Both the position numbers and the translations under genes were made by a program. The notes below the pieces were generated by a model. That model ran no database searches and was not told where the DNA came from. It worked only from the letters and a program-made list of their open reading frames with translations. A DNA stretch of 63,960 nt, filler included, from Octopus bimaculoides (lineage: Eukaryota): the NCBI RefSeq assembly GCF_001194135.2. It is 6 parts of 5 records of this genome, joined end to end, with 100 filler letters (N's around TTAATTAATTAA, not from the genome) between each part and the next. Parts side by side here need not be neighbours in the genome. Positions count along the whole stretch, not along the records: positions 1 to 21,324 come from NC_068997.1; 5 more parts are not named here. The stretch is one strand, 5' to 3'. Shown one piece after another: positions 11,824-21,289 of this stretch (positions are counted from its first letter, which is position 1; each line of letters begins with the position of its first letter).

Positions 11824-13513
11824 ATCTAGAGGATACTCATTGTTAATATGTATGACATAATGTAGCAATGCATGGAGTAACGTGGTCTGTTGTTACATTC
11901 TTGTGATGTTACAGACTATAAATATGCAATGTGAAGTTACAGACTGTTACAATATCTGTTAAATTACAAACTGTATTAATGTGTTGGCATTACAGTGTTT
12001 GTTGTGATGTTACAGTCTTGGACACCGTTGGCTATAACTAGGATAGTGAGCCCCTCCTCTAACTTTGGTTCATCATAACTTACTTTAAAATGCATATTTT
12101 TTAATGAAAATTTTCAGAGATACATTTTAGGTAGTGTAGATTATAATTGTGCCAGAATAAGTTGCAAAAATATGGGGGTTGGGGGTGGAGAAAATTTCGT
12201 ATGATTCTCCCTTTCTAAATCTAGCTCATGACTTTCATAAAAATGCACACTTTTTTAATGAAATTTTTCAGATGTATTTTTGGATGGTGTAAATTACGAT
12301 TATGTAAGAAAAAAAAATTGAAAGAGCAGTTTTCTTTTTGAAAGATCATTCCCTCTACCAATCAAACTTTGTTAAATGTATATATCTTTTATTGAATTTC
12401 TTGAGAGATATGTTTCGGTGTATAGAGTATGTTTATCTTGATTACATTGGGAGGGTGGGGGAAATTTGAAGGAGTTTCGGATCTCCTTAAACCTTCTAAC
12501 GGTTGTGTCTCTCTTTTCCTTTTGGCACTTATACTCGTTTAACCTCTTTTCATATTTTTTTATTTGTATCGACCGTGCGATGTACTAAAGGAGCCATTTC
12601 CTCGTCATCTCTCCTGGTCGCACGGTCGTTACAAAATAATCATGACCTACACCATCTAAAATGTATCTCTGTAAGATTTCATTAAAAATCGTGCATTGAA
12701 GTGACTTGATTTCCTAGAAATAGCAAACTGAGTTTTGTCTTTGTTGATGTATTCCTAGATATATTGTGTGGGAAACAAAAGTGAGATGGTCTCAGTTGGA
12801 GCATTCTGATCGGAAGTCTACTGGGCTAAAGATAAACGTCTTCATTTAACCCCTTCATTCGCTTGTTTCTGATGAAATATACTGCTTTTTTGATTAATTA
12901 TGAAAATAAAAAAAATTGACGGTGGATTTAGTAAAATAGTTGACGTCTTTATCATTGGCAAAAAGTTAACACTTTTGTTACCAAATTTCTATTGAAGTGC
13001 ATTGCTTTTGCTTCAGTTAATAAACAAAATAACGAAGAATTTAGTAAATATCTCTTCGGCATTGTTAAGAAGGTGTTTGGTACACAAATCAACTTGAAAT
13101 TTTGAAGGAAGATTTGAATTTAAATCGTATAAAACAGAAAGTTTGTACCATAGGACTAAGAGTGATCTTAGCCAGGTTGATATCAAAATGATGAAAAAGG
13201 TTCTTGAATAAAAGCAGAATGGAAGCTATTCATTTAGATATAAATATATTAAAAAGAAGGGTGGTCTTAGATAGTTAACTATCAAAAGGATTTAGTAGCG
13301 GCCTCCCTAAGTTCATTCGTCCATTTGAAATTCCAGATCCTAAGTCTGAGAGAACATGGAAATGAGTTAGTCCTGCCTTATTACTGCTTCCCTCCTGAAT
13401 GTCTGAAATGTGTGTGTGTGCGTAGGGTCAGGTTTTAGCCAGTCTAATTGATCCACAAACTCAGGAAACAAACAAAAACTTCATTTCTTTCTAATCCATT
13501 TTCTCTATTTTAG

Positions 13514-13615
13514 GATCTGGCATCTTCATTTCGCCCAAGGGCGTTCTTGAAGCGAGCAGGTCTGTTGGATTGACCATGATTATATGGCTTGGATGCGGTG
13601 TCATTGCCATGCTCT
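13514..13615 (+). CDS. SLC7A9: SLC7A9-like coding exon 2 ([34 protein letters not shown])
   Basis: tttag acceptor, 102 nt, phase 1 to 1, gtgagt donor. [12 protein letters not shown] is the SLC7/LAT signature. Confidence 0.93.
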
Positions 13616-14239: not shown

Positions 14240-14545
14240 TATGTGTGTGTGCGTGTTTATGTGCGTGTGTGTTTATGTATGTGTGTGTTTATGTATGTAT
14301 ATGCGTGTTTATGTATGTATGTATGTATGTACGCGTGTTTATGTATGTGTGTGTGTGTTTTATGCATGTGCGTGTGTGTTTATGTATGTATATGCGTGTT
14401 TATGTATGTATGTACGCGTGTTTATGTATGTATGTGTGCGTGTGTGTTTTATGTATGTGTGTCTGTTTATGTTTGTGGGTGTTTATGTATATGTTCATGT
14501 ATATGTGTGTGTGCAAGTGTTTCTACGTATGTATATGTGCGTATG
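14240..14545. repeat. Compound (TG/TATG/GCGTGTTTATG) microsatellite
   Basis: Directly visible. Confidence 0.9.
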
Positions 14546-15324
14546 ATTGTGTTTGGTGTACTGTTGTAAACTGGTGTATCAAGTTCTGTCCACATCACGA
14601 AATAGCTTAGCCATTTAACAAAGAGTGATAAAATTATCATTCCCAGCATGGCTACAGCACAGGGATTGAGGCCAATAAAAGAATAGATATGTGTGACTGC
14701 GTGTGCATTTATTCTCTGATCAGGAAGGGATGATTTGTTTATGATCCTTTACAGGGTATCTGGTTTTGGTGGGAGTAAGCAAAGAAAGGAGATATTCTGA
14801 ACCAGAGATTTGGCCTTAATGCTTGCTACAGCACGGACCCTGTTGATGGTTCTCAAAGTCCCACTTGGTGGTGTTTGACCAAGAAATGGATAACGTCCAC
14901 CACCCATTTAGGTCCTGTAGAAATTTGAACTCAGAATGCAAAGACCCGAAACAAATACTGCAAGGAATCCTGTCAAACATTTGCTTATACTTTTCTTTAT
15001 TCCTTCTTCTGGATGGACATTTTTTTCACTAACTCAGAACGGATGACACACAAAGTTGATCATCGTGGGATTTGAACTCGAAGCACAAGAAGGTGGAACA
15101 GATACCGTCTGTCTGATGCTATATTGACTCTGCCAATTTGCTTCTTTAGAATATTTGGTAATAATAGTTGAACATTAGTCAGAATGATATACAAGATTAC
15201 TCAGCATTTACTATGTTCCATACTATTGCGTACAATAGTAATACAGGCCATTACTGTTGCATACAATGGTAACGTGGACGTAACATGGCTGAAAATATAA
15301 ACAGCTTGCTTCCATAGATGCAAG

Positions 15325-17260: not shown

Positions 17261-17420
17261 AGGCAGCGAGCTGGCAGAAACGCTAGCATGTTGGGTGAAA
17301 TGCTAAGCGGTATTTCGTCTGCCTTTATGTTCTGAGTTCAAATTCCACTAAGGTTGACTTTGCCTTTCAACTTTTCAGGGTTGATAAATTGAGTACCAGT
17401 TGTGTACTGGGGCCAATCTA
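17261..17420 (+). mobile_element. SINE family A, CpG-decayed
   Basis: aggcagcgagctggcagaaacg...gttgactttgcctttc. Confidence 0.8.
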
Positions 17421-18003
17421 AGTATTTATACATTTATTCATTTAGTATAATGAAAACATCTTATTTGTGATATGTAATCAATATTAATACTATTGGGTTG
17501 GTGCAAATTTTATTCAACAAAAACAATAACAACATGTAACAACAACATCTTTAAATGGTTCTTCCGGAGCATATTCACCATCTACTTCAATTACTGCTTC
17601 CCATTTGCTTGGCAGACGGCCAAACCGTCATTTAAAGATGTTTTTGTTAAATGTTGTTATCGATGTCACCAACATGGGTGCCTTGAATGCTAAAAGGTTA
17701 AAGCAATAAAATATTTGATTAGTTTTTAGTTAGCAATGAGAGCATTGAAAAATCACTAGAGTGTAAACTCCCTAAGATATGTTATGATGAAAGTATCATT
17801 ACAAGTTGGTTGAGAATAGGTTTTTACTGGACCAGGTAGGTTATCTTATCAAATCTGAAGGATTGAAAGACAGGTGAACCCAGCAAATTTTGAACTTAGA
17901 ATGTAAAAGTGACTTGATTACTTATCACAATATATCTAATCCCTCATTCATCCTATACATTACCCCTTCTGTCACACCCACTACCTTTCCTAGTCTTCTT
18001 TAA

Positions 18004-18222
18004 CCCTTTGGCATTTAATCTGACCATATGGAGCCCAAATTTTCTACCTGTTTTATGCTAAAATGCCTGGATCTGGTCTCTCACACCTACCCTGCAATGT
18101 CATTCTAAAAATATACGAACACATTATTGAAGTCTTGAAACTACAAGATAATATGTGATTAATTCGAAACAATGTTAATAAATAAGCATTACATCTGACA
18201 AAGAAATCTGAATGCTAAAGGG
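18004..18222. mobile_element. piggyBac-type MITE
   Basis: ttaa-ccctttggcatt ... aatgctaaaggg. Confidence 0.7.
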
Positions 18223-18496
18223 TGTATGACGACTATTTCATTGGCTAATTTATAAATGTTTTATTAAGGCATAGTTTCTACTTACTGTCAGTTCAGTTTC
18301 CAATGATAGTAATAGTCTTCCCCAAAATTTCAGACACAACGCCTGGGAGGTGGGTTAGTCGATTAAACTGATTTCAATTCCCGAAAGAGTGAAAGGCAAA
18401 GATGATCTTGGCAGGATTTGAACCCAGGATATAAAGAGCCGAAAGAAATGCTGCAAAGCATTTTATCTGATTCACTAATGATTTTTCTAGCTTGTA

Positions 18497-18529
<33 letters not shown>

Positions 18530-18530
18530 A

Positions 18531-19031
18531 TGTGAAGTATATTTGCAACTTAAATGTGGCTAACCACTAAGGGTGAATGCTACTGTAGCTTGTAGCCCCT
18601 GGAGAACATCTCCTCCAGCTGGCTATTAACTCACTTTCTGTGCCCTGTCAGTATTTGCAAAGGGAAGTCCTCCTTCCCATCGTCGATCTGACGTGATATG
18701 CACGGACCTGGGTTTCTGGGTATTTACCCTTCGTCAGCGTACGACAATCACCGATCTTCGATGCGAAGGATATATGTGTTTGCATTAGGAGCTCTTCGCA
18801 TCGAAGATCGGTGATTGTCGTACGCTGACGAAGGGTAAATACCCAGAAACCCGGGTCCGTGCGTATCACGTCAGATCGAAGATGGGAAGGATGGCTTCCC
18901 TTTGCAAATACTGATAGGGCACAGAAAGTGTGTCAATAGCCAGCTGGAGGAGATGTTCTCCTGGGGCTACAAGCTACAGTAGCATTCACCCTTAGGGGTT
19001 AGCCACATTTAAGTGGCAAACATACTTCACG
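18531..19031. repeat. Long near-perfect inverted repeat (238-bp arms, 25-nt spacer)
   Basis: Arms 18531-18768 and 18794-19031 are reverse complements with roughly a dozen substitutions and no visible indel. Confidence 0.95.
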
Positions 19032-19122
19032 TTGTCGTGTAGCTACTGTTTATACCTCGTTCAGAGATTTATTATTAATGATAATAATAATAAACTTCTA
19101 ACTATTATGTCTTCTTTTACAG

Positions 19123-19365
19123 CTTCCTTATCTTATGTAGAATTGGGGACGTTTATTACAAAGTCTGGCGGAGAATTTTCCTATATCATGACAGGTCTTC
19201 CAGCAGTGTTGGCGTTCTTGTACAGTTGGTGTTCGGTTATAGTCCTCAGACCTTCAGGATTGGCTGTGATCTGCTTGGCTTTTGCTGAATATGTAGCTTC
19301 TCCTGTCTTCGATTCATGCGGACCACCAGTTGTCTTTGTGAAATGTTTGGCTGCTGCAGCAATCA
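19123..19365 (+). CDS. SLC7A9: SLC7A9-like coding exon 3 (SSLSYVELGTFITKSGGEFSYI...SPVFDSCGPPVVFVKCLAAAAI)
   Basis: ttttacag acceptor, 243 nt, gtaagt donor. Carries the YxELG and KSGGE motifs. CGPPVVFVKCLAAAAI closely matches human SLC7A9 CKPPQIVVKCLAAAAI, including the Cys that links to the heavy chain. Confidence 0.95.
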
Positions 19366-19415
19366 GTAAGTTCATTGACATATGATAACAGGCTTGCACG
19401 CATACATACACACAA

Positions 19416-19468
<53 letters not shown>

Positions 19469-19755
19469 CACACACAAACACATGCATATATGTAATGATT
19501 TCATTCAGGAGTTAACTTTTATGCATAATTTTGAATTTTGATTGTCTCAATGACACCCTATGAATCAATAACTGCATATATCATTGCATGACATAGTAAT
19601 ATCTATGAGATCAGTTTTGATGAAACAATTGTAAATAAACTTAATAAAAGAACTTGCTCACTCCATTTTCCTTGGTTATAATTGTACATGCATACATGTA
19701 TACATACATACATACATACACACACACATACATACATACACACATACATACATAC

Positions 19756-19787
<32 letters not shown>

Positions 19788-19998
19788 TAAATTCAAATTA
19801 TGACAAACGTAAATAAACAAACGGAGTTTGCTTTTTAGAAGCGTTGAGATGTCTTAGAAAGTTAAAGAAGTGATTTTAAATTCTCAATCACAGAATAATG
19901 CTAGCCAGCCACCTACACTTTTCTCTGCAAAATAGGGGCAGTTTATCCTGTTCACGCTATATTATTAGCATTATTCTGCGATTGAGAATATATATATA

Positions 19999-20061
<63 letters not shown>

Positions 20062-21071: not shown

Positions 21072-21197
21072 TTGTGATCACAGCAATCAACTGTTACAGT
21101 ACTGAATTGGCAGCAAGCATTCAGGTGATTTTTACCGTAGCTAAGATCATAGCCCTCATCATCATCATCATTGGTGGTTTTGTAATGATGGGAAGAG
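21072..21197 (+). CDS. SLC7A9: SLC7A9-like coding exon 4 (IVITAINCYSTELAASIQVIFTVAKIIALIIIIIGGFVMMGRG)
   Basis: tttttgtccag acceptor, 126 nt, G|gtaatt donor. INCxS and Q-x-IFT-x-AK motifs of SLC7 TM4-TM5, in frame with exon 3. Confidence 0.93.
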
Positions 21198-21289
21198 GTA
21201 ATTATAAGCAAAAATTTTGTCTTCTTTTGTTTTCGTGTTTATTGTATGCTTCAGCATGACTGCAGCCACATACCTGAAATACATAAGAG

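What the first reader, a model, noticed from the sequence alone, without database searches (positions are those of the whole stretch)
18531..19031. 501-bp near-perfect palindrome 91 nt upstream of the exon 3 splice acceptor
Seen: 238-bp arms at about 95% identity with no indels, a 25-nt spacer, CpG-rich despite lying in the CpG-depleted domain, no evident TSD, (TAA)n on the left, and no other copy in the window. Several arm differences are CpG decays. In the pre-mRNA it would fold into a dsRNA stem of about 240 bp beside the branch-point region. Inference: a strong ADAR hyper-editing or Dicer substrate that could modulate exon 3 splicing or editing. Possible origins are a foldback DNA element or the ITR-ITR junction of a tyrosine-recombinase (DIRS-type) retroelement, which would explain the short spacer and missing TSD. 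This is the best candidate for something undescribed, but it is unproven.
Basis: partly seen in the sequence, partly recalled or inferred. Interest (0 to 1): 0.72.

Follow-up and report, generated by a model that had tools for sequence, protein, structure and literature searches.

The report
Penelope-type retroelement hairpin in octopus intron
The 499-bp palindrome is real, but it is most likely two head-to-head truncated copies of a hammerhead-ribozyme-bearing Penelope-like retroelement that landed in a microsatellite in an Octopus bimaculoides intron, which is a known kind of insertion and probably a passive one.

Summary
The arms are 18532-18768 and 18794-19030: 237 nt, 12 mismatches, no indels, a 25-nt spacer. 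The predicted RNA hairpin is -468 kcal/mol.

The window is Octopus bimaculoides, intron 2 of an SLC7A9-like amino-acid transporter gene, 92 nt upstream of exon 3. All three O. vulgaris paralogues have an uninterrupted (TAA)n tract at this site. The palindrome plus a 39-nt one-sided tail (18531-19069) is therefore an insertion specific to the O. bimaculoides lineage, into the (TAA)n tail of an older SINE.

Each arm carries a type-I hammerhead-ribozyme motif on opposite strands: 6-bp helix I, a CUGANGA core, helix II, GAAA, and a 1-bp helix III closing a palindromic loop. Published descriptions of truncated Penelope-like element (PLE) insertions list the same set of features: head-to-head inverted copies, a 30-40-bp tail at one end only, a microsatellite target and no clear target-site duplication (TSD). 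O. vulgaris holds an unrelated family with the same architecture, next to intact RT + GIY-YIG PLE genes.

The long dsRNA, and so ADAR editing, remains plausible but untested. Dicer processing is unlikely in molluscs. Copy number in O. bimaculoides could not be tested. This is a new member of a known kind, of low to moderate interest.

The parts
18340..18496 (+). Body of an older tRNA-like SINE. It is the host of the insertion site, not part of the element. The start coordinate is approximate.
   Evidence: Similar copies lie at window 4784-4865, 8446-8489, 564-611(-), 14923-14963 and 17298-17380(-). It is orthologous in O. vulgaris L001 32843-33018 and partly in L002.
18497..18530 (+). (TAA)n tail of the SINE: left part of the microsatellite target.
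   Evidence: TRF finds period 3 with 11.3 copies. The tract is uninterrupted in all three O. vulgaris paralogues.
18532..18768 (-). Left arm: the inverted, 5'-truncated copy of the unit. Its 3' end faces outward to the left and it has no tail.
   Evidence: 237 nt, 94.9% identical to the reverse complement of the right arm. The hammerhead motif lies on the minus strand.
18700..18742 (-). Hammerhead-ribozyme motif of the left arm, slightly decayed.
   Evidence: Descriptor hit. Two CpG>TpG changes (18709, 18699) break the palindromic loop 3 (CCCAGG) and the last pair of helix I.
18769..18793 (+). 25-nt spacer, read as the extra 5' sequence of the longer, sense-strand copy (the loop of the hairpin).
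   Evidence: By analogy with the O. vulgaris family, where single copies extend further 5' than the hairpin arms.
18794..19030 (+). Right arm: the sense-strand 5'-truncated copy of the unit.
   Evidence: The hammerhead motif lies on the plus strand, followed by the 3' end, the tail and the microsatellite.
18819..18863 (+). Type-I hammerhead-ribozyme motif. Helix I is CGTACG/CGTGCG, the core is CTGACGA (18825-18831), helix II is GGG(T)-loop-(A)CCC flanked by A and A, GAAA is at 18846-18849, and helix III is A-U closing the palindromic loop CCCGGG. The predicted cleavage site follows C18857.
   Evidence: The descriptor search finds only this hit and its mirror copy in the 21-kb window. There were 0 hits in 2000 shuffles of the palindrome and 1 hit in 100 shuffles of the window. 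The architecture matches the published metazoan type-I / PLE hammerheads. It is not detected by Rfam models.
19031..19069 (+). 39-nt non-palindromic tail, present only on the right side and co-inserted with the palindrome. It may extend to 19080.
   Evidence: Absent from all three O. vulgaris empty sites. It has no match elsewhere. PLE insertions often carry a 30-40-bp tail at one end only (PMC8557442; PMC3846280).
19070..19093 (+). Right remainder of the microsatellite target. TTATTATTA-AT-GA-TAATAATAA forms a small 10-bp inverted repeat. A 12-nt ATAATAATAATA run flanks both sides of 18531-19080.
   Evidence: This could be a TSD or simply the microsatellite; the two cannot be told apart.
19098..19122 (+). 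Intact 3' splice-site signals of intron 2: candidate branch site CTAAC (19098-19102), polypyrimidine tract, AG (19121-19122).
   Evidence: The signals are conserved in O. vulgaris.
19123..19365 (+). Exon 3 (243 nt) of the b(0,+)-type amino-acid transporter 1-like (SLC7A9-like) gene.
   Evidence: tblastn and P0011, an O. bimaculoides protein 98% identical over the spliced exons.

Best explanation
The palindrome is a single retroelement insertion event: two 5'-truncated copies of the terminal (pseudo-LTR-type) region of a Penelope-like retroelement, or of a non-autonomous derivative of one, joined head to head.

Layout:
- The sense copy is spacer + right arm + tail (18769-19069, 301 nt).
- The inverted copy is the left arm (18532-18768), which lacks the last 39 nt.
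- Each copy carries a type-I hammerhead-ribozyme motif.

The insertion went into the (TAA)n tail of an older SINE in intron 2 of an SLC7A9-like gene, in the O. bimaculoides lineage after its split from O. vulgaris. The mechanism is inferred from the literature on PLEs, not shown here. A GIY-YIG endonuclease cuts at a microsatellite. Reverse transcription is primed from the break. A second priming or self-priming (snap-back) event then produces the inverted copy, so that the two arms were identical at birth and have since diverged by 5%.

Today it is most probably a passive intronic passenger. In the pre-mRNA the two arms pair into a 237-bp stem. That stem locks the sense hammerhead in a duplex, so self-cleavage is unlikely, loops the insert out, and leaves the branch site and acceptor untouched. 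The stem is a plausible ADAR hyper-editing substrate (inferred, untested).
For: Derived insertion:
- Synteny with O. vulgaris L001 breaks exactly at window 18531-19069.
- The three O. vulgaris paralogues L001, L002 and L003 all have an uninterrupted (TAA)n about 35 nt upstream of the exon-3 acceptor.
- Arm divergence is K2P 0.052, against 0.09 for the orthologous intron. That fits arms identical at an insertion made after the species split.

Hammerhead motifs:
- They lie at 18819-18863(+) and 18700-18742(-) and are the only descriptor hits in the window.
- There were 0 hits in 2000 shuffles of the palindrome and 0.01 hits expected per window.
- The architecture is a 6-bp helix I, a 4-bp helix II with a 5' extra nucleotide, and a 1-bp helix III with a palindromic loop. 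This is what PMC4209133 describes for metazoan and PLE hammerheads. That paper also reports 'dual min-HHRs ~100-700 bp apart on opposite strands' as truncated PLEs.

PLE insertion features in the literature:
- High 5' truncation.
- An inverted 5'-truncated copy adjacent at the 5' end.
- A 30-40-bp tail, often at one end only.
- Microsatellite insertion bias.
- A TSD that is variable or absent (PMC8557442; PMC3846280).
- The window insertion matches these: 39-nt tail on one side, (TAA)n target, no clear TSD.

Independent parallel in O. vulgaris:
- L001 33735-33913/33936-34114 has 179-nt arms at 92% identity and a 22-nt spacer.
- It has a hammerhead on each strand, a ~60-nt tail on one side and (TA)n on both flanks.
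- It belongs to a dispersed family with variable 5' ends and an optional tail.
- It lies next to PLE genes: L001 27237-29324(-) has RVT_1 + GIY-YIG, and 34489-36552(-) is homologous to it.
Against: - No RT/GIY-YIG ORF or other copy of this particular family could be examined. No O. bimaculoides DNA beyond the window was reachable. Nothing similar exists in 191 kb of O. vulgaris. The link to an autonomous PLE is therefore by architecture, not by sequence homology.
- Rfam hammerhead models do not score the motif.
- The 10.1/11.1 position is A.A instead of the highly conserved G-C, equivalent to an extra A before G12. The isolated 49-mer does not fold into the hammerhead as its minimum-energy structure. 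Catalytic competence is doubtful.
- My descriptor was written after I saw the motif.
- The published microsatellite preferences are (TA)n and (CA)n, not (TAA)n.
- In the O. vulgaris example the hairpin unit shows no sequence similarity to the adjacent PLE body.
Confidence: 0.68

Rival explanations
1. A non-autonomous cut-and-paste DNA transposon of the foldback / long-TIR MITE type inserted into the (TAA)n tract. The 237-nt arms are its terminal inverted repeats.
For: - It has near-perfect long inverted repeats with a short interior.
- It is a lineage-specific insertion.
- A weak 9-nt direct repeat, TATTTGCAA, occurs at the terminus and 110 nt inside each arm, reminiscent of IR/DR transposase sites (shuffle P ~0.02).
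- A second, older foldback with CAG termini and a possible 8-bp TSD exists at window 1218-1615.
Against: - There is no TSD at the palindrome edges.
- A 39-nt co-inserted tail on one side means the inverted repeats are not terminal on the right.
- The termini match no superfamily I could recognise.
- It does not explain a hammerhead motif in each arm.
- It does not explain the same tail-plus-microsatellite layout in an unrelated O. vulgaris family that also occurs as single, variably 5'-truncated copies.
Confidence: 0.12
2. A one-off host repair product. A break in the fragile (TAA)n tract was filled by copying about 300 nt from an ectopic donor. Fold-back (snap-back) synthesis by a DNA polymerase then duplicated 237 nt in reverse, with no retroelement machinery involved.
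For: - It explains the missing TSD, the one-sided tail, the short loop, arms identical at birth, and the absence of further copies in 212 kb.
- A small inverted microsatellite sits at the right junction (19070-19093).
Against: - The donor would still have to be a hammerhead-bearing unit.
- The identical architecture recurs in a multi-copy family in O. vulgaris. A recurrent, element-encoded mechanism is therefore more economical than repeated accidents.
Confidence: 0.1
3. The ITR-ITR junction of a DIRS-type (tyrosine-recombinase) retroelement, or another TSD-less element such as a Helitron or Crypton.
For: - There is no TSD.
- Read on the minus strand, the insertion starts with TC after a host A, as Helitrons do.
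Against: - There is no YR, RT or Rep/helicase ORF near it. The only retroelement ORF in the window, 9154-9642(-), is 9 kb away and integrase-like.
- There is no CTRR 3' end.
- A 499-bp hairpin is unlike Helitron 3' hairpins.
- A bare DIRS ITR junction has no known route to insertion.
- The hammerhead motifs point elsewhere.
Confidence: 0.03
4. Assembly artefact: a chimeric foldback read, or a mis-join of two repeat copies in a draft assembly.
For: The window is a draft with N gaps at 7867-8130 and 9809-10209. PLE inverted structures are known to trouble short-read assemblies (PMC8557442).
Against: - The arms differ at 12 positions with no indels, partly at CpG sites, as expected for real in-situ divergence.
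- The junctions sit cleanly inside an orthologous microsatellite.
- The nearest gap is 8 kb away.
- A comparable structure is present in the long-read, chromosome-level O. vulgaris assembly.
Confidence: 0.03
5. Whatever its origin, the hairpin has been co-opted as a regulator. It would act as an ADAR-recruiting 'editing inducer element' for exon 3, as a splicing modulator, or as a self-cleaving intronic ribozyme.
For: - It forms a very stable stem 92 nt from the exon.
- Long intronic duplexes about 150 nt from an exon can induce site-selective editing in mammals (PMC3479170; PMC5654063).
- The sense hammerhead lies in the transcribed strand.
Against: - It is absent from the O. vulgaris paralogues, and the arms are diverging at about the neutral rate, so there is no conservation.
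- The splice signals are intact and exon 3 is in the gene model.
- The hammerhead is sequestered in the 237-bp duplex, has a non-canonical 10.1/11.1 position and needs a dimer.
- No RNA data are available.
Confidence: 0.07

Closest known systems
Truncated Penelope-like element (PLE) insertions with inverted pseudo-LTRs and hammerhead ribozymes (Evgen'ev & Arkhipova; Arkhipova et al. 2013, PMC3846280; Cervera & de la Pena 2014, PMC4209133; Craig et al. 2021, PMC8557442)
   Same: Head-to-head inverted 5'-truncated copies of about 180-240 bp. A short junction. A 30-40-bp tail at one end only. A microsatellite target. A variable or absent TSD. A type-I hammerhead with a short palindromic helix III in each copy, on opposite strands about 120 bp apart.
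   Different: This copy has no RT/GIY-YIG ORF and no demonstrated sequence link to an autonomous PLE. The target is (TAA)n rather than the reported (TA)n or (CA)n. The hammerhead has A.A at 10.1/11.1. The whole insert consists of only the two terminal fragments.
Animal non-LTR retrozymes / SINE-like hammerhead repeats (Cervera & de la Pena 2020, PMC7229834; bioRxiv 10.64898/2026.07.22.740005)
   Same: A non-coding unit of about 300 nt with a classical type-I hammerhead (6-bp helix I, 4-bp helix II, minimal palindromic helix III). Such units are proposed to be non-autonomous derivatives of PLE termini and are reported in molluscs.
   Different: Retrozymes are defined by head-to-tail tandem repeats and circular RNA products. 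Here the two units are inverted, and no tandem array or RNA evidence exists.
Foldback elements and long-TIR MITEs (class II)
   Same: A near-complete palindrome with a short loop, non-coding, sitting in an intron.
   Different: These elements have TSDs and inverted repeats at both termini and move by a transposase. Here there is no TSD, a one-sided tail and hammerhead motifs. There are no internal tandem subrepeats of the kind seen in Drosophila FB.
L1 5' inversions by twin priming (Ostertag & Kazazian 2001; from my own knowledge)
   Same: One retrotransposition event gives an insert whose 5' part is inverted, through a second priming event at the target break.
   Different: Twin priming inverts a different, adjacent segment with only small overlaps. 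Here both arms copy the same 237 nt.
Inverted Alu pairs and intronic editing inducer elements in mammals (PMC4053975, PMC3479170, PMC5654063)
   Same: Long intronic dsRNA near an exon, which is a substrate and possible recruiter of ADAR.
   Different: Alu duplexes need two independent insertions and are imperfect. This hairpin arose in one event with a 25-nt loop. No editing data exist here.

Membership tests
Penelope-like element (PLE)-derived insertion | ORF with an RT related to telomerase RT plus a GIY-YIG endonuclease | tested here: not met
   There is no ORF with any Pfam hit in the insert and no protein homologue of any frame. This copy can only be a truncated or non-autonomous derivative. 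Such ORFs do exist in the sister species at L001 27237-29324(-) and 34489-36552(-).
Penelope-like element (PLE)-derived insertion | Hammerhead ribozyme motif in the terminal repeat (pLTR) | tested here: met
   The descriptor hits 18819-18863(+) and 18700-18742(-). There were 0 hits in 2000 palindrome shuffles. The features match. Caveats: A.A at 10.1/11.1, no Rfam hit, and activity untested.
Penelope-like element (PLE)-derived insertion | 5'-truncated copy with an adjacent inverted 5'-truncated copy (head-to-head inverted repeats) | tested here: met
   The arms are 18532-18768(-) and 18794-19030(+). The hammerhead sense strands point outward, and one copy is 25 nt longer at the junction.
Penelope-like element (PLE)-derived insertion | 30-40-bp extension ('tail') at one end of the unit only | tested here: met
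   A 39-nt tail at 19031-19069 is present only on the right and absent from the empty sites. Literature.
Penelope-like element (PLE)-derived insertion | Insertion bias for microsatellites; TSD short, variable or absent | tested here: met
   It is inserted inside (TAA)n. The 12-nt flanking repeat cannot be told apart from the microsatellite. The motif differs from the published (TA)n and (CA)n.
Penelope-like element (PLE)-derived insertion | Sequence homology of the unit to the 3' end or pLTR of an autonomous PLE in the same genome; multi-copy family with graded 5' truncation | not testable with these tools
   No O. bimaculoides genome was reachable. There were 0 hits in 191 kb of O. vulgaris and in the viral, metagenome and prokaryote collections.
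Non-LTR retrozyme | Head-to-tail tandem repeats of a 170-400-nt unit with a type-I hammerhead, expressed as circular RNA | tested here: not met
   Unit size (301 nt) and the hammerhead fit, but the copies are inverted, not tandem. RNA could not be tested.
Foldback / MITE (class II transposon) | Terminal inverted repeats at both ends, flanked by a TSD of fixed length | tested here: not met
   No TSD of 4 bp or more lies at the palindrome edges. The right arm is followed by a co-inserted 39-nt tail.
DIRS-type retroelement (ITR junction) | Linked tyrosine-recombinase and RT/RNase H ORFs; ITRs with an internal complementary region | tested here: not met
   No such ORF lies in the window. The only retroelement ORF is integrase-like and 9 kb away. 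Genome-wide linkage could not be tested.
Helitron | 5' TC, 3' CTRR preceded by a short GC-rich hairpin, insertion between A and T | tested here: not met
   The minus-strand reading gives A|TC at the 5' end, but there is no CTRR at the 3' end and the 'hairpin' is 499 bp.
Hammerhead ribozyme (Rfam RF00163 and relatives) | Score above the gathering threshold of a curated covariance model | tested here: not met
   No hammerhead family scores at E<=1 on the window or E<=10 on 18790-18900. The minimal, loop-less helix III of PLE-type motifs is a likely reason, but that is my inference.

The most novel reading that the evidence does not exclude
Head-to-head PLE insertions could be a one-step generator of long, near-perfect intronic dsRNA in cephalopods. 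They might therefore be a substantial, so far unappreciated class of ADAR substrates or ADAR-recruiting 'editing inducer' elements. On this reading, the copy studied here influences editing or inclusion of exon 3 of the transporter gene in O. bimaculoides but not in O. vulgaris.
Probability: 0.1. Interest if true: 0.55.

Novelty: new member of a known kind. Interest (0 to 1): 0.3.

Why it matters
On its own this is an ordinary young repeat in an intron. It has three uses:
- It shows that a striking 'perfect palindrome without TSD' in an animal genome can be explained by the known but little-recognised insertion architecture of Penelope-like elements. The signs are hammerhead motifs, a one-sided tail and a microsatellite target. 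Standard tools miss it: Rfam gave no hammerhead hit and there is no protein homology.
- It gives a dated presence/absence difference between two octopus species, right beside a splice acceptor. That is a natural experiment for asking whether a 237-bp intronic hairpin attracts ADAR or alters splicing in an animal with very heavy RNA editing.
- It suggests that PLE inverted dimers deserve to be counted as a source of dsRNA in cephalopod transcriptomes.

Tried and rejected
- **Searching for other copies through translated ORFs.** A concatenated three-frame translation of the insert run against 5.8 billion proteins gave 0 hits at E<=10. Exact look-ups of the ORF running from the palindrome into exon 3 returned nothing on record. 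The O. bimaculoides protein P0011 has no DNA on record. Copy number in the host genome therefore stayed untestable.
- **Exact-pattern scans.** Scans of viral (2), metagenome (2) and prokaryote genome (1) collections with arm segments all gave 0 hits.
- **Rfam.** There were only sub-threshold generic hairpin hits (MIR399 on both strands) and microsatellite-driven miRNA hits. No hammerhead family scored.
- **tRNA or pol III origin.** ARAGORN found nothing.
- **TSD search.** All boundary offsets were tried. Nothing appeared at the palindrome edges, and the only repeat is the microsatellite itself.
- **Internal subrepeats.** There are no Drosophila FB-like tandem repeats. The only IR/DR-like feature is a weak 9-mer.
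- **Helitron, DIRS, Tc1/mariner, PIF/Harbinger and hAT end signatures.** None fits.
- **My intermediate favourite.** Before I leaned towards a host-repair or generic RT snap-back origin. I replaced this with the PLE reading once the literature features and the hammerhead motif were checked.
- **Link to a bona fide PLE.** I looked for a hammerhead near the intact O. vulgaris PLE ORF (L001 26000-30200) and found none with my descriptor. The O. vulgaris hairpin unit shows no similarity to the neighbouring PLE body. The link between hairpins and PLE genes in octopus is therefore by architecture and proximity only.
- **Thermodynamic folding of the isolated hammerhead.** This was not informative: z about -1, and helix II is not in the minimum-energy fold.
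Full report
**Observation.** The palindrome is real. The repeat finder reports arms 18532-18768 and 18794-19030: 237 nt, 95% complementary, 25 nt apart. An ungapped comparison gives 12 mismatches and no indels. A 54-mer from the arm occurs exactly twice, once per arm, with none expected in shuffles. The region folds as RNA to -468 kcal/mol, against -166 +/- 9 for shuffles. No other copy of the arm exists in the window.

CpG o/e is 0.72 in the palindrome, against 0.45 for the rest of intron 2 and 0.38 for the left flank. It equals the window mean of 0.70. All CpGs lie in the inner ~90 bp of each arm. Only 2-3 of the 12 arm differences are at CpGs.

**Where it is.** Spliced exons from the window match an Octopus bimaculoides UniRef protein, P0011, at 98% identity over full length. 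The gene is a b(0,+)-type amino-acid transporter 1-like (SLC7A9-like) gene. The exons are:
- exon 1 at 10800-10883
- exon 2 at about 13510-13614
- exon 3 at 19123-19365 (243 nt)
- exon 4 at about 21074-21205

The palindrome lies in intron 2, 92 nt upstream of exon 3. A candidate branch site CTAAC (19098-19102), the polypyrimidine tract and the AG all lie downstream of it and are intact.

**It is a derived insertion.** O. vulgaris has three tandem paralogues of the gene on OX597830.1, fetched as loci L001, L002 and L003. Window 17817-18530 aligns to L001 32368-33018, and window 19070-19465 aligns to L001 33008-33407. O. vulgaris therefore lacks window 18531-19069.

In all three paralogues an uninterrupted (TAA)n tract runs up to about 35 nt before the exon-3 acceptor. 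In L001 and L002 that tract is visibly the tail of the same SINE that lies left of the palindrome in the window.

The inserted block is the 499-bp palindrome plus a 39-nt non-palindromic tail on the right only (19031-19069). There is no TSD at the palindrome edges. The only flanking direct repeat is the microsatellite itself.

Orthologous intron divergence is K2P ~0.09 and arm-to-arm divergence is 0.052. This fits arms that were identical when inserted, some time after the species split.

**What it is.** I first weighed three options: a cut-and-paste foldback/MITE, a host-repair inverted duplication, and a retroelement insertion with a second priming event. The one-sided tail and the missing TSD argued against the first.

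The literature on Penelope-like elements (PLEs) describes the observed combination:
- strong 5' truncation
- an inverted 5'-truncated copy adjacent at the 5' end
- a 30-40-bp tail often present at one end only
- an insertion bias for microsatellites (PMC8557442)
- inverted pseudo-LTRs of about 180-220 bp, a 31-bp optional tail, TSDs of 8-10 bp or none, and palindromic inverted junctions attributed to self-priming (PMC3846280)

PLE terminal repeats also carry type-I or minimal hammerhead ribozymes. 'Dual' motifs 100-700 bp apart on opposite strands have been interpreted as truncated PLEs (PMC4209133).

**The hammerhead motif.** Reading the arms with this in mind, the right arm holds a type-I hammerhead motif on the plus strand at 18819-18863:
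- helix I CGUACG/CGUGCG (6 bp, one G.U pair)
- core CUGACGA
- an extra A
- helix II GGG(U)...(A)CCC with loop UAAAUA
- an A, then GAAA
- helix III reduced to A15.1-U16.1 around the palindromic CCCGGG
- C17 at 18857

The left arm holds the mirror copy on the minus strand (18700-18742). Two CpG>TpG changes there have damaged loop 3 and the end of helix I.

A simple descriptor finds only these two hits in the 21-kb window. It finds none in 2000 shuffles of the palindrome and 1 in 100 shuffles of the window.

Caveats:
- I wrote the descriptor after seeing the motif.
- Rfam's hammerhead models do not score it.
- Position 10.1/11.1 is A.A rather than the conserved G-C.
- The isolated 49-mer does not adopt the hammerhead as its minimum-energy fold.

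I therefore claim a hammerhead-derived motif, not an active ribozyme.

**An independent parallel.** The same descriptor picked out a pair of opposite-strand hammerheads in O. vulgaris L001 (33778-33838 minus, 34011-34071 plus). They sit in the two arms of another hairpin:
- arms 33735-33913 and 33936-34114, 179 nt at 92% identity, with a 22-nt spacer
- a tail of about 60 nt on the right only
- (TA)n on both flanks

This hairpin is absent from the window, so it is an O. vulgaris-side insertion. Its unit is unrelated in sequence to the window's.

The unit belongs to a dispersed family. Copies lie at L001 4478-4738(-), L001 5797-6017(+), L002 4749-5009(-), L002 6125-6325(+) and L002 22627-22954. 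The copies have variable 5' ends, an optional tail, and a 3' end that always abuts (TA)n.

Bona fide PLE genes lie in the same locus. [quoted passage not shown] L001 34489-36552(-), right next to the hairpin, is homologous to it in both domains (E = 2e-30 and 2e-9).

The architecture seen in the window therefore recurs in octopus genomes, in company with PLEs. The link to the PLE genes has two weak points. I found no hammerhead near the intact PLE ORF. The hairpin unit is also not similar to the neighbouring PLE body. The link rests on architecture and proximity, not on homology.

**How it most likely works.**

Shown:
- It is a lineage-specific insertion of 538-550 bp into a SINE's (TAA)n tail.
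- It consists of a 301-nt sense unit (spacer + right arm + tail) and an inverted 237-nt copy.
- Each copy has a hammerhead motif.

Inferred from the cited PLE literature:
- Integration used a PLE RT/GIY-YIG machinery acting at a microsatellite.
- The inverted copy was made by a second priming or self-priming event, so the arms were identical at birth.

Inferred for the present:
- In the pre-mRNA the arms pair into a 237-bp stem.
- The stem sequesters the sense hammerhead, which in any case would need a dimer.
- The stem loops the insert out and leaves the splice signals free.
- The gene model includes exon 3.
- The only annotated exon-3-skipping isoform (P0004) is from O. vulgaris, which lacks the insert.

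ADAR hyper-editing of such a young inverted repeat is plausible (PMC9989829) but untested. Dicer processing is unlikely, because molluscs including O. bimaculoides lack a dedicated siRNA pathway and detectable endo-siRNAs (PMC12479628). A role as an ADAR-recruiting element for exon 3, by analogy with mammalian editing inducer elements (PMC3479170), is possible but has no support here.

**Limits.** I could not reach any O. bimaculoides sequence beyond the window. Three things remain untested: copy number, the existence of an autonomous partner, and confirmation of the palindrome in independent reads. Zero further copies in 21 kb of O. bimaculoides and 191 kb of O. vulgaris only excludes a very high-copy family. 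One small observation is unexplained: there is no arm mismatch in the innermost 59 bp (about P = 0.03).

**Verdict.** The proposed origins and the claim of something undescribed do not stand. It is best filed as a new, unannotated member of a known kind: a truncated head-to-head Penelope-type retroelement insertion with hammerhead motifs. Confidence is about 0.68 and interest is 0.3.

Noticed in passing
window 1218-1615: A second, older foldback. The arms are 1218-1357 and 1476-1615: 140 nt at 81%, with pairing that continues with indels toward the centre. The termini are CAGCTT, and the flanks carry an imperfect 8-bp repeat (AGTCTGCA / AGTTTGTG), so it may be a hAT-type MITE. My descriptor finds no hammerhead in it.
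   Followed up: partly
L001 33735-34175 (O. vulgaris); related copies at L001 4478-4738(-), L001 5797-6017(+), L002 4749-5009(-), L002 6125-6325(+), L002 22627-22954: A hammerhead-bearing repeat family in O. vulgaris. It occurs both as a head-to-head hairpin (179-nt arms, 22-nt spacer, one-sided ~60-nt tail) and as single copies with variable 5' ends and an optional tail. Every copy abuts (TA)n. The two copies at L001 4478-4738 and 5797-6017 are inverted around about 1 kb and lie in a 3.1-kb block that is absent from the window.
   Followed up: partly
L001 27237-29324(-) and L001 34489-36552(-): Two Penelope-like element genes lie inside the O. vulgaris orthologous locus. One is an intact 696-aa ORF with RVT_1 + C-terminal GIY-YIG, flanked by microsatellites. 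The other is split across frames and homologous to the first in both domains. No hammerhead was found near the intact one with my descriptor.
   Followed up: partly
L001, L002, L003 (OX597830.1, about 19.1-19.56 Mb): O. vulgaris has three tandem paralogues of the SLC7A9-like gene. L001 and L002 each align to the window at about 90% in non-coding DNA, so orthology is one-to-many. The annotated isoform P0004 skips the 243-nt exon 3 in frame, although an intact exon 3 is present in L001. Intron 2 is 21.5 kb in L001 against 5.5 kb in the window.
   Followed up: partly
window 9154-9642(-): A 162-aa ORF with LTR-retrotransposon integrase-like residues (Integrase_H2C2, below threshold). It is cut off by the assembly gap at 9809-10209 and is absent from O. 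vulgaris at this position.
   Followed up: partly
window 18710-18852: The innermost 59 bp of both arms are identical even though they hold 6 CpGs per arm. All 12 mismatches lie in the outer 178 bp (about P = 0.03 under uniformity). Possible causes are chance or conversion near the hairpin tip. This is unexplained.
   Followed up: no
window 19400-19800 and 19960-20060; also 420-830, 6650-6900, 14240-14610: Long (TG)n/(TA)n/(ACAT)n microsatellite tracts give many sub-threshold Rfam 'miRNA' hits (mir-297, mir-466 and others). All are below the gathering scores and should be ignored.
   Followed up: yes
window 4784-4865, 8446-8489, 564-611(-), 14923-14963, 17298-17380(-), 18380-18463: At least six copies of one tRNA-like SINE lie in 21 kb. 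The copy left of the palindrome ends in (TAA)n, which forms the sequence just upstream of the exon-3 branch site in both octopus species.
   Followed up: partly
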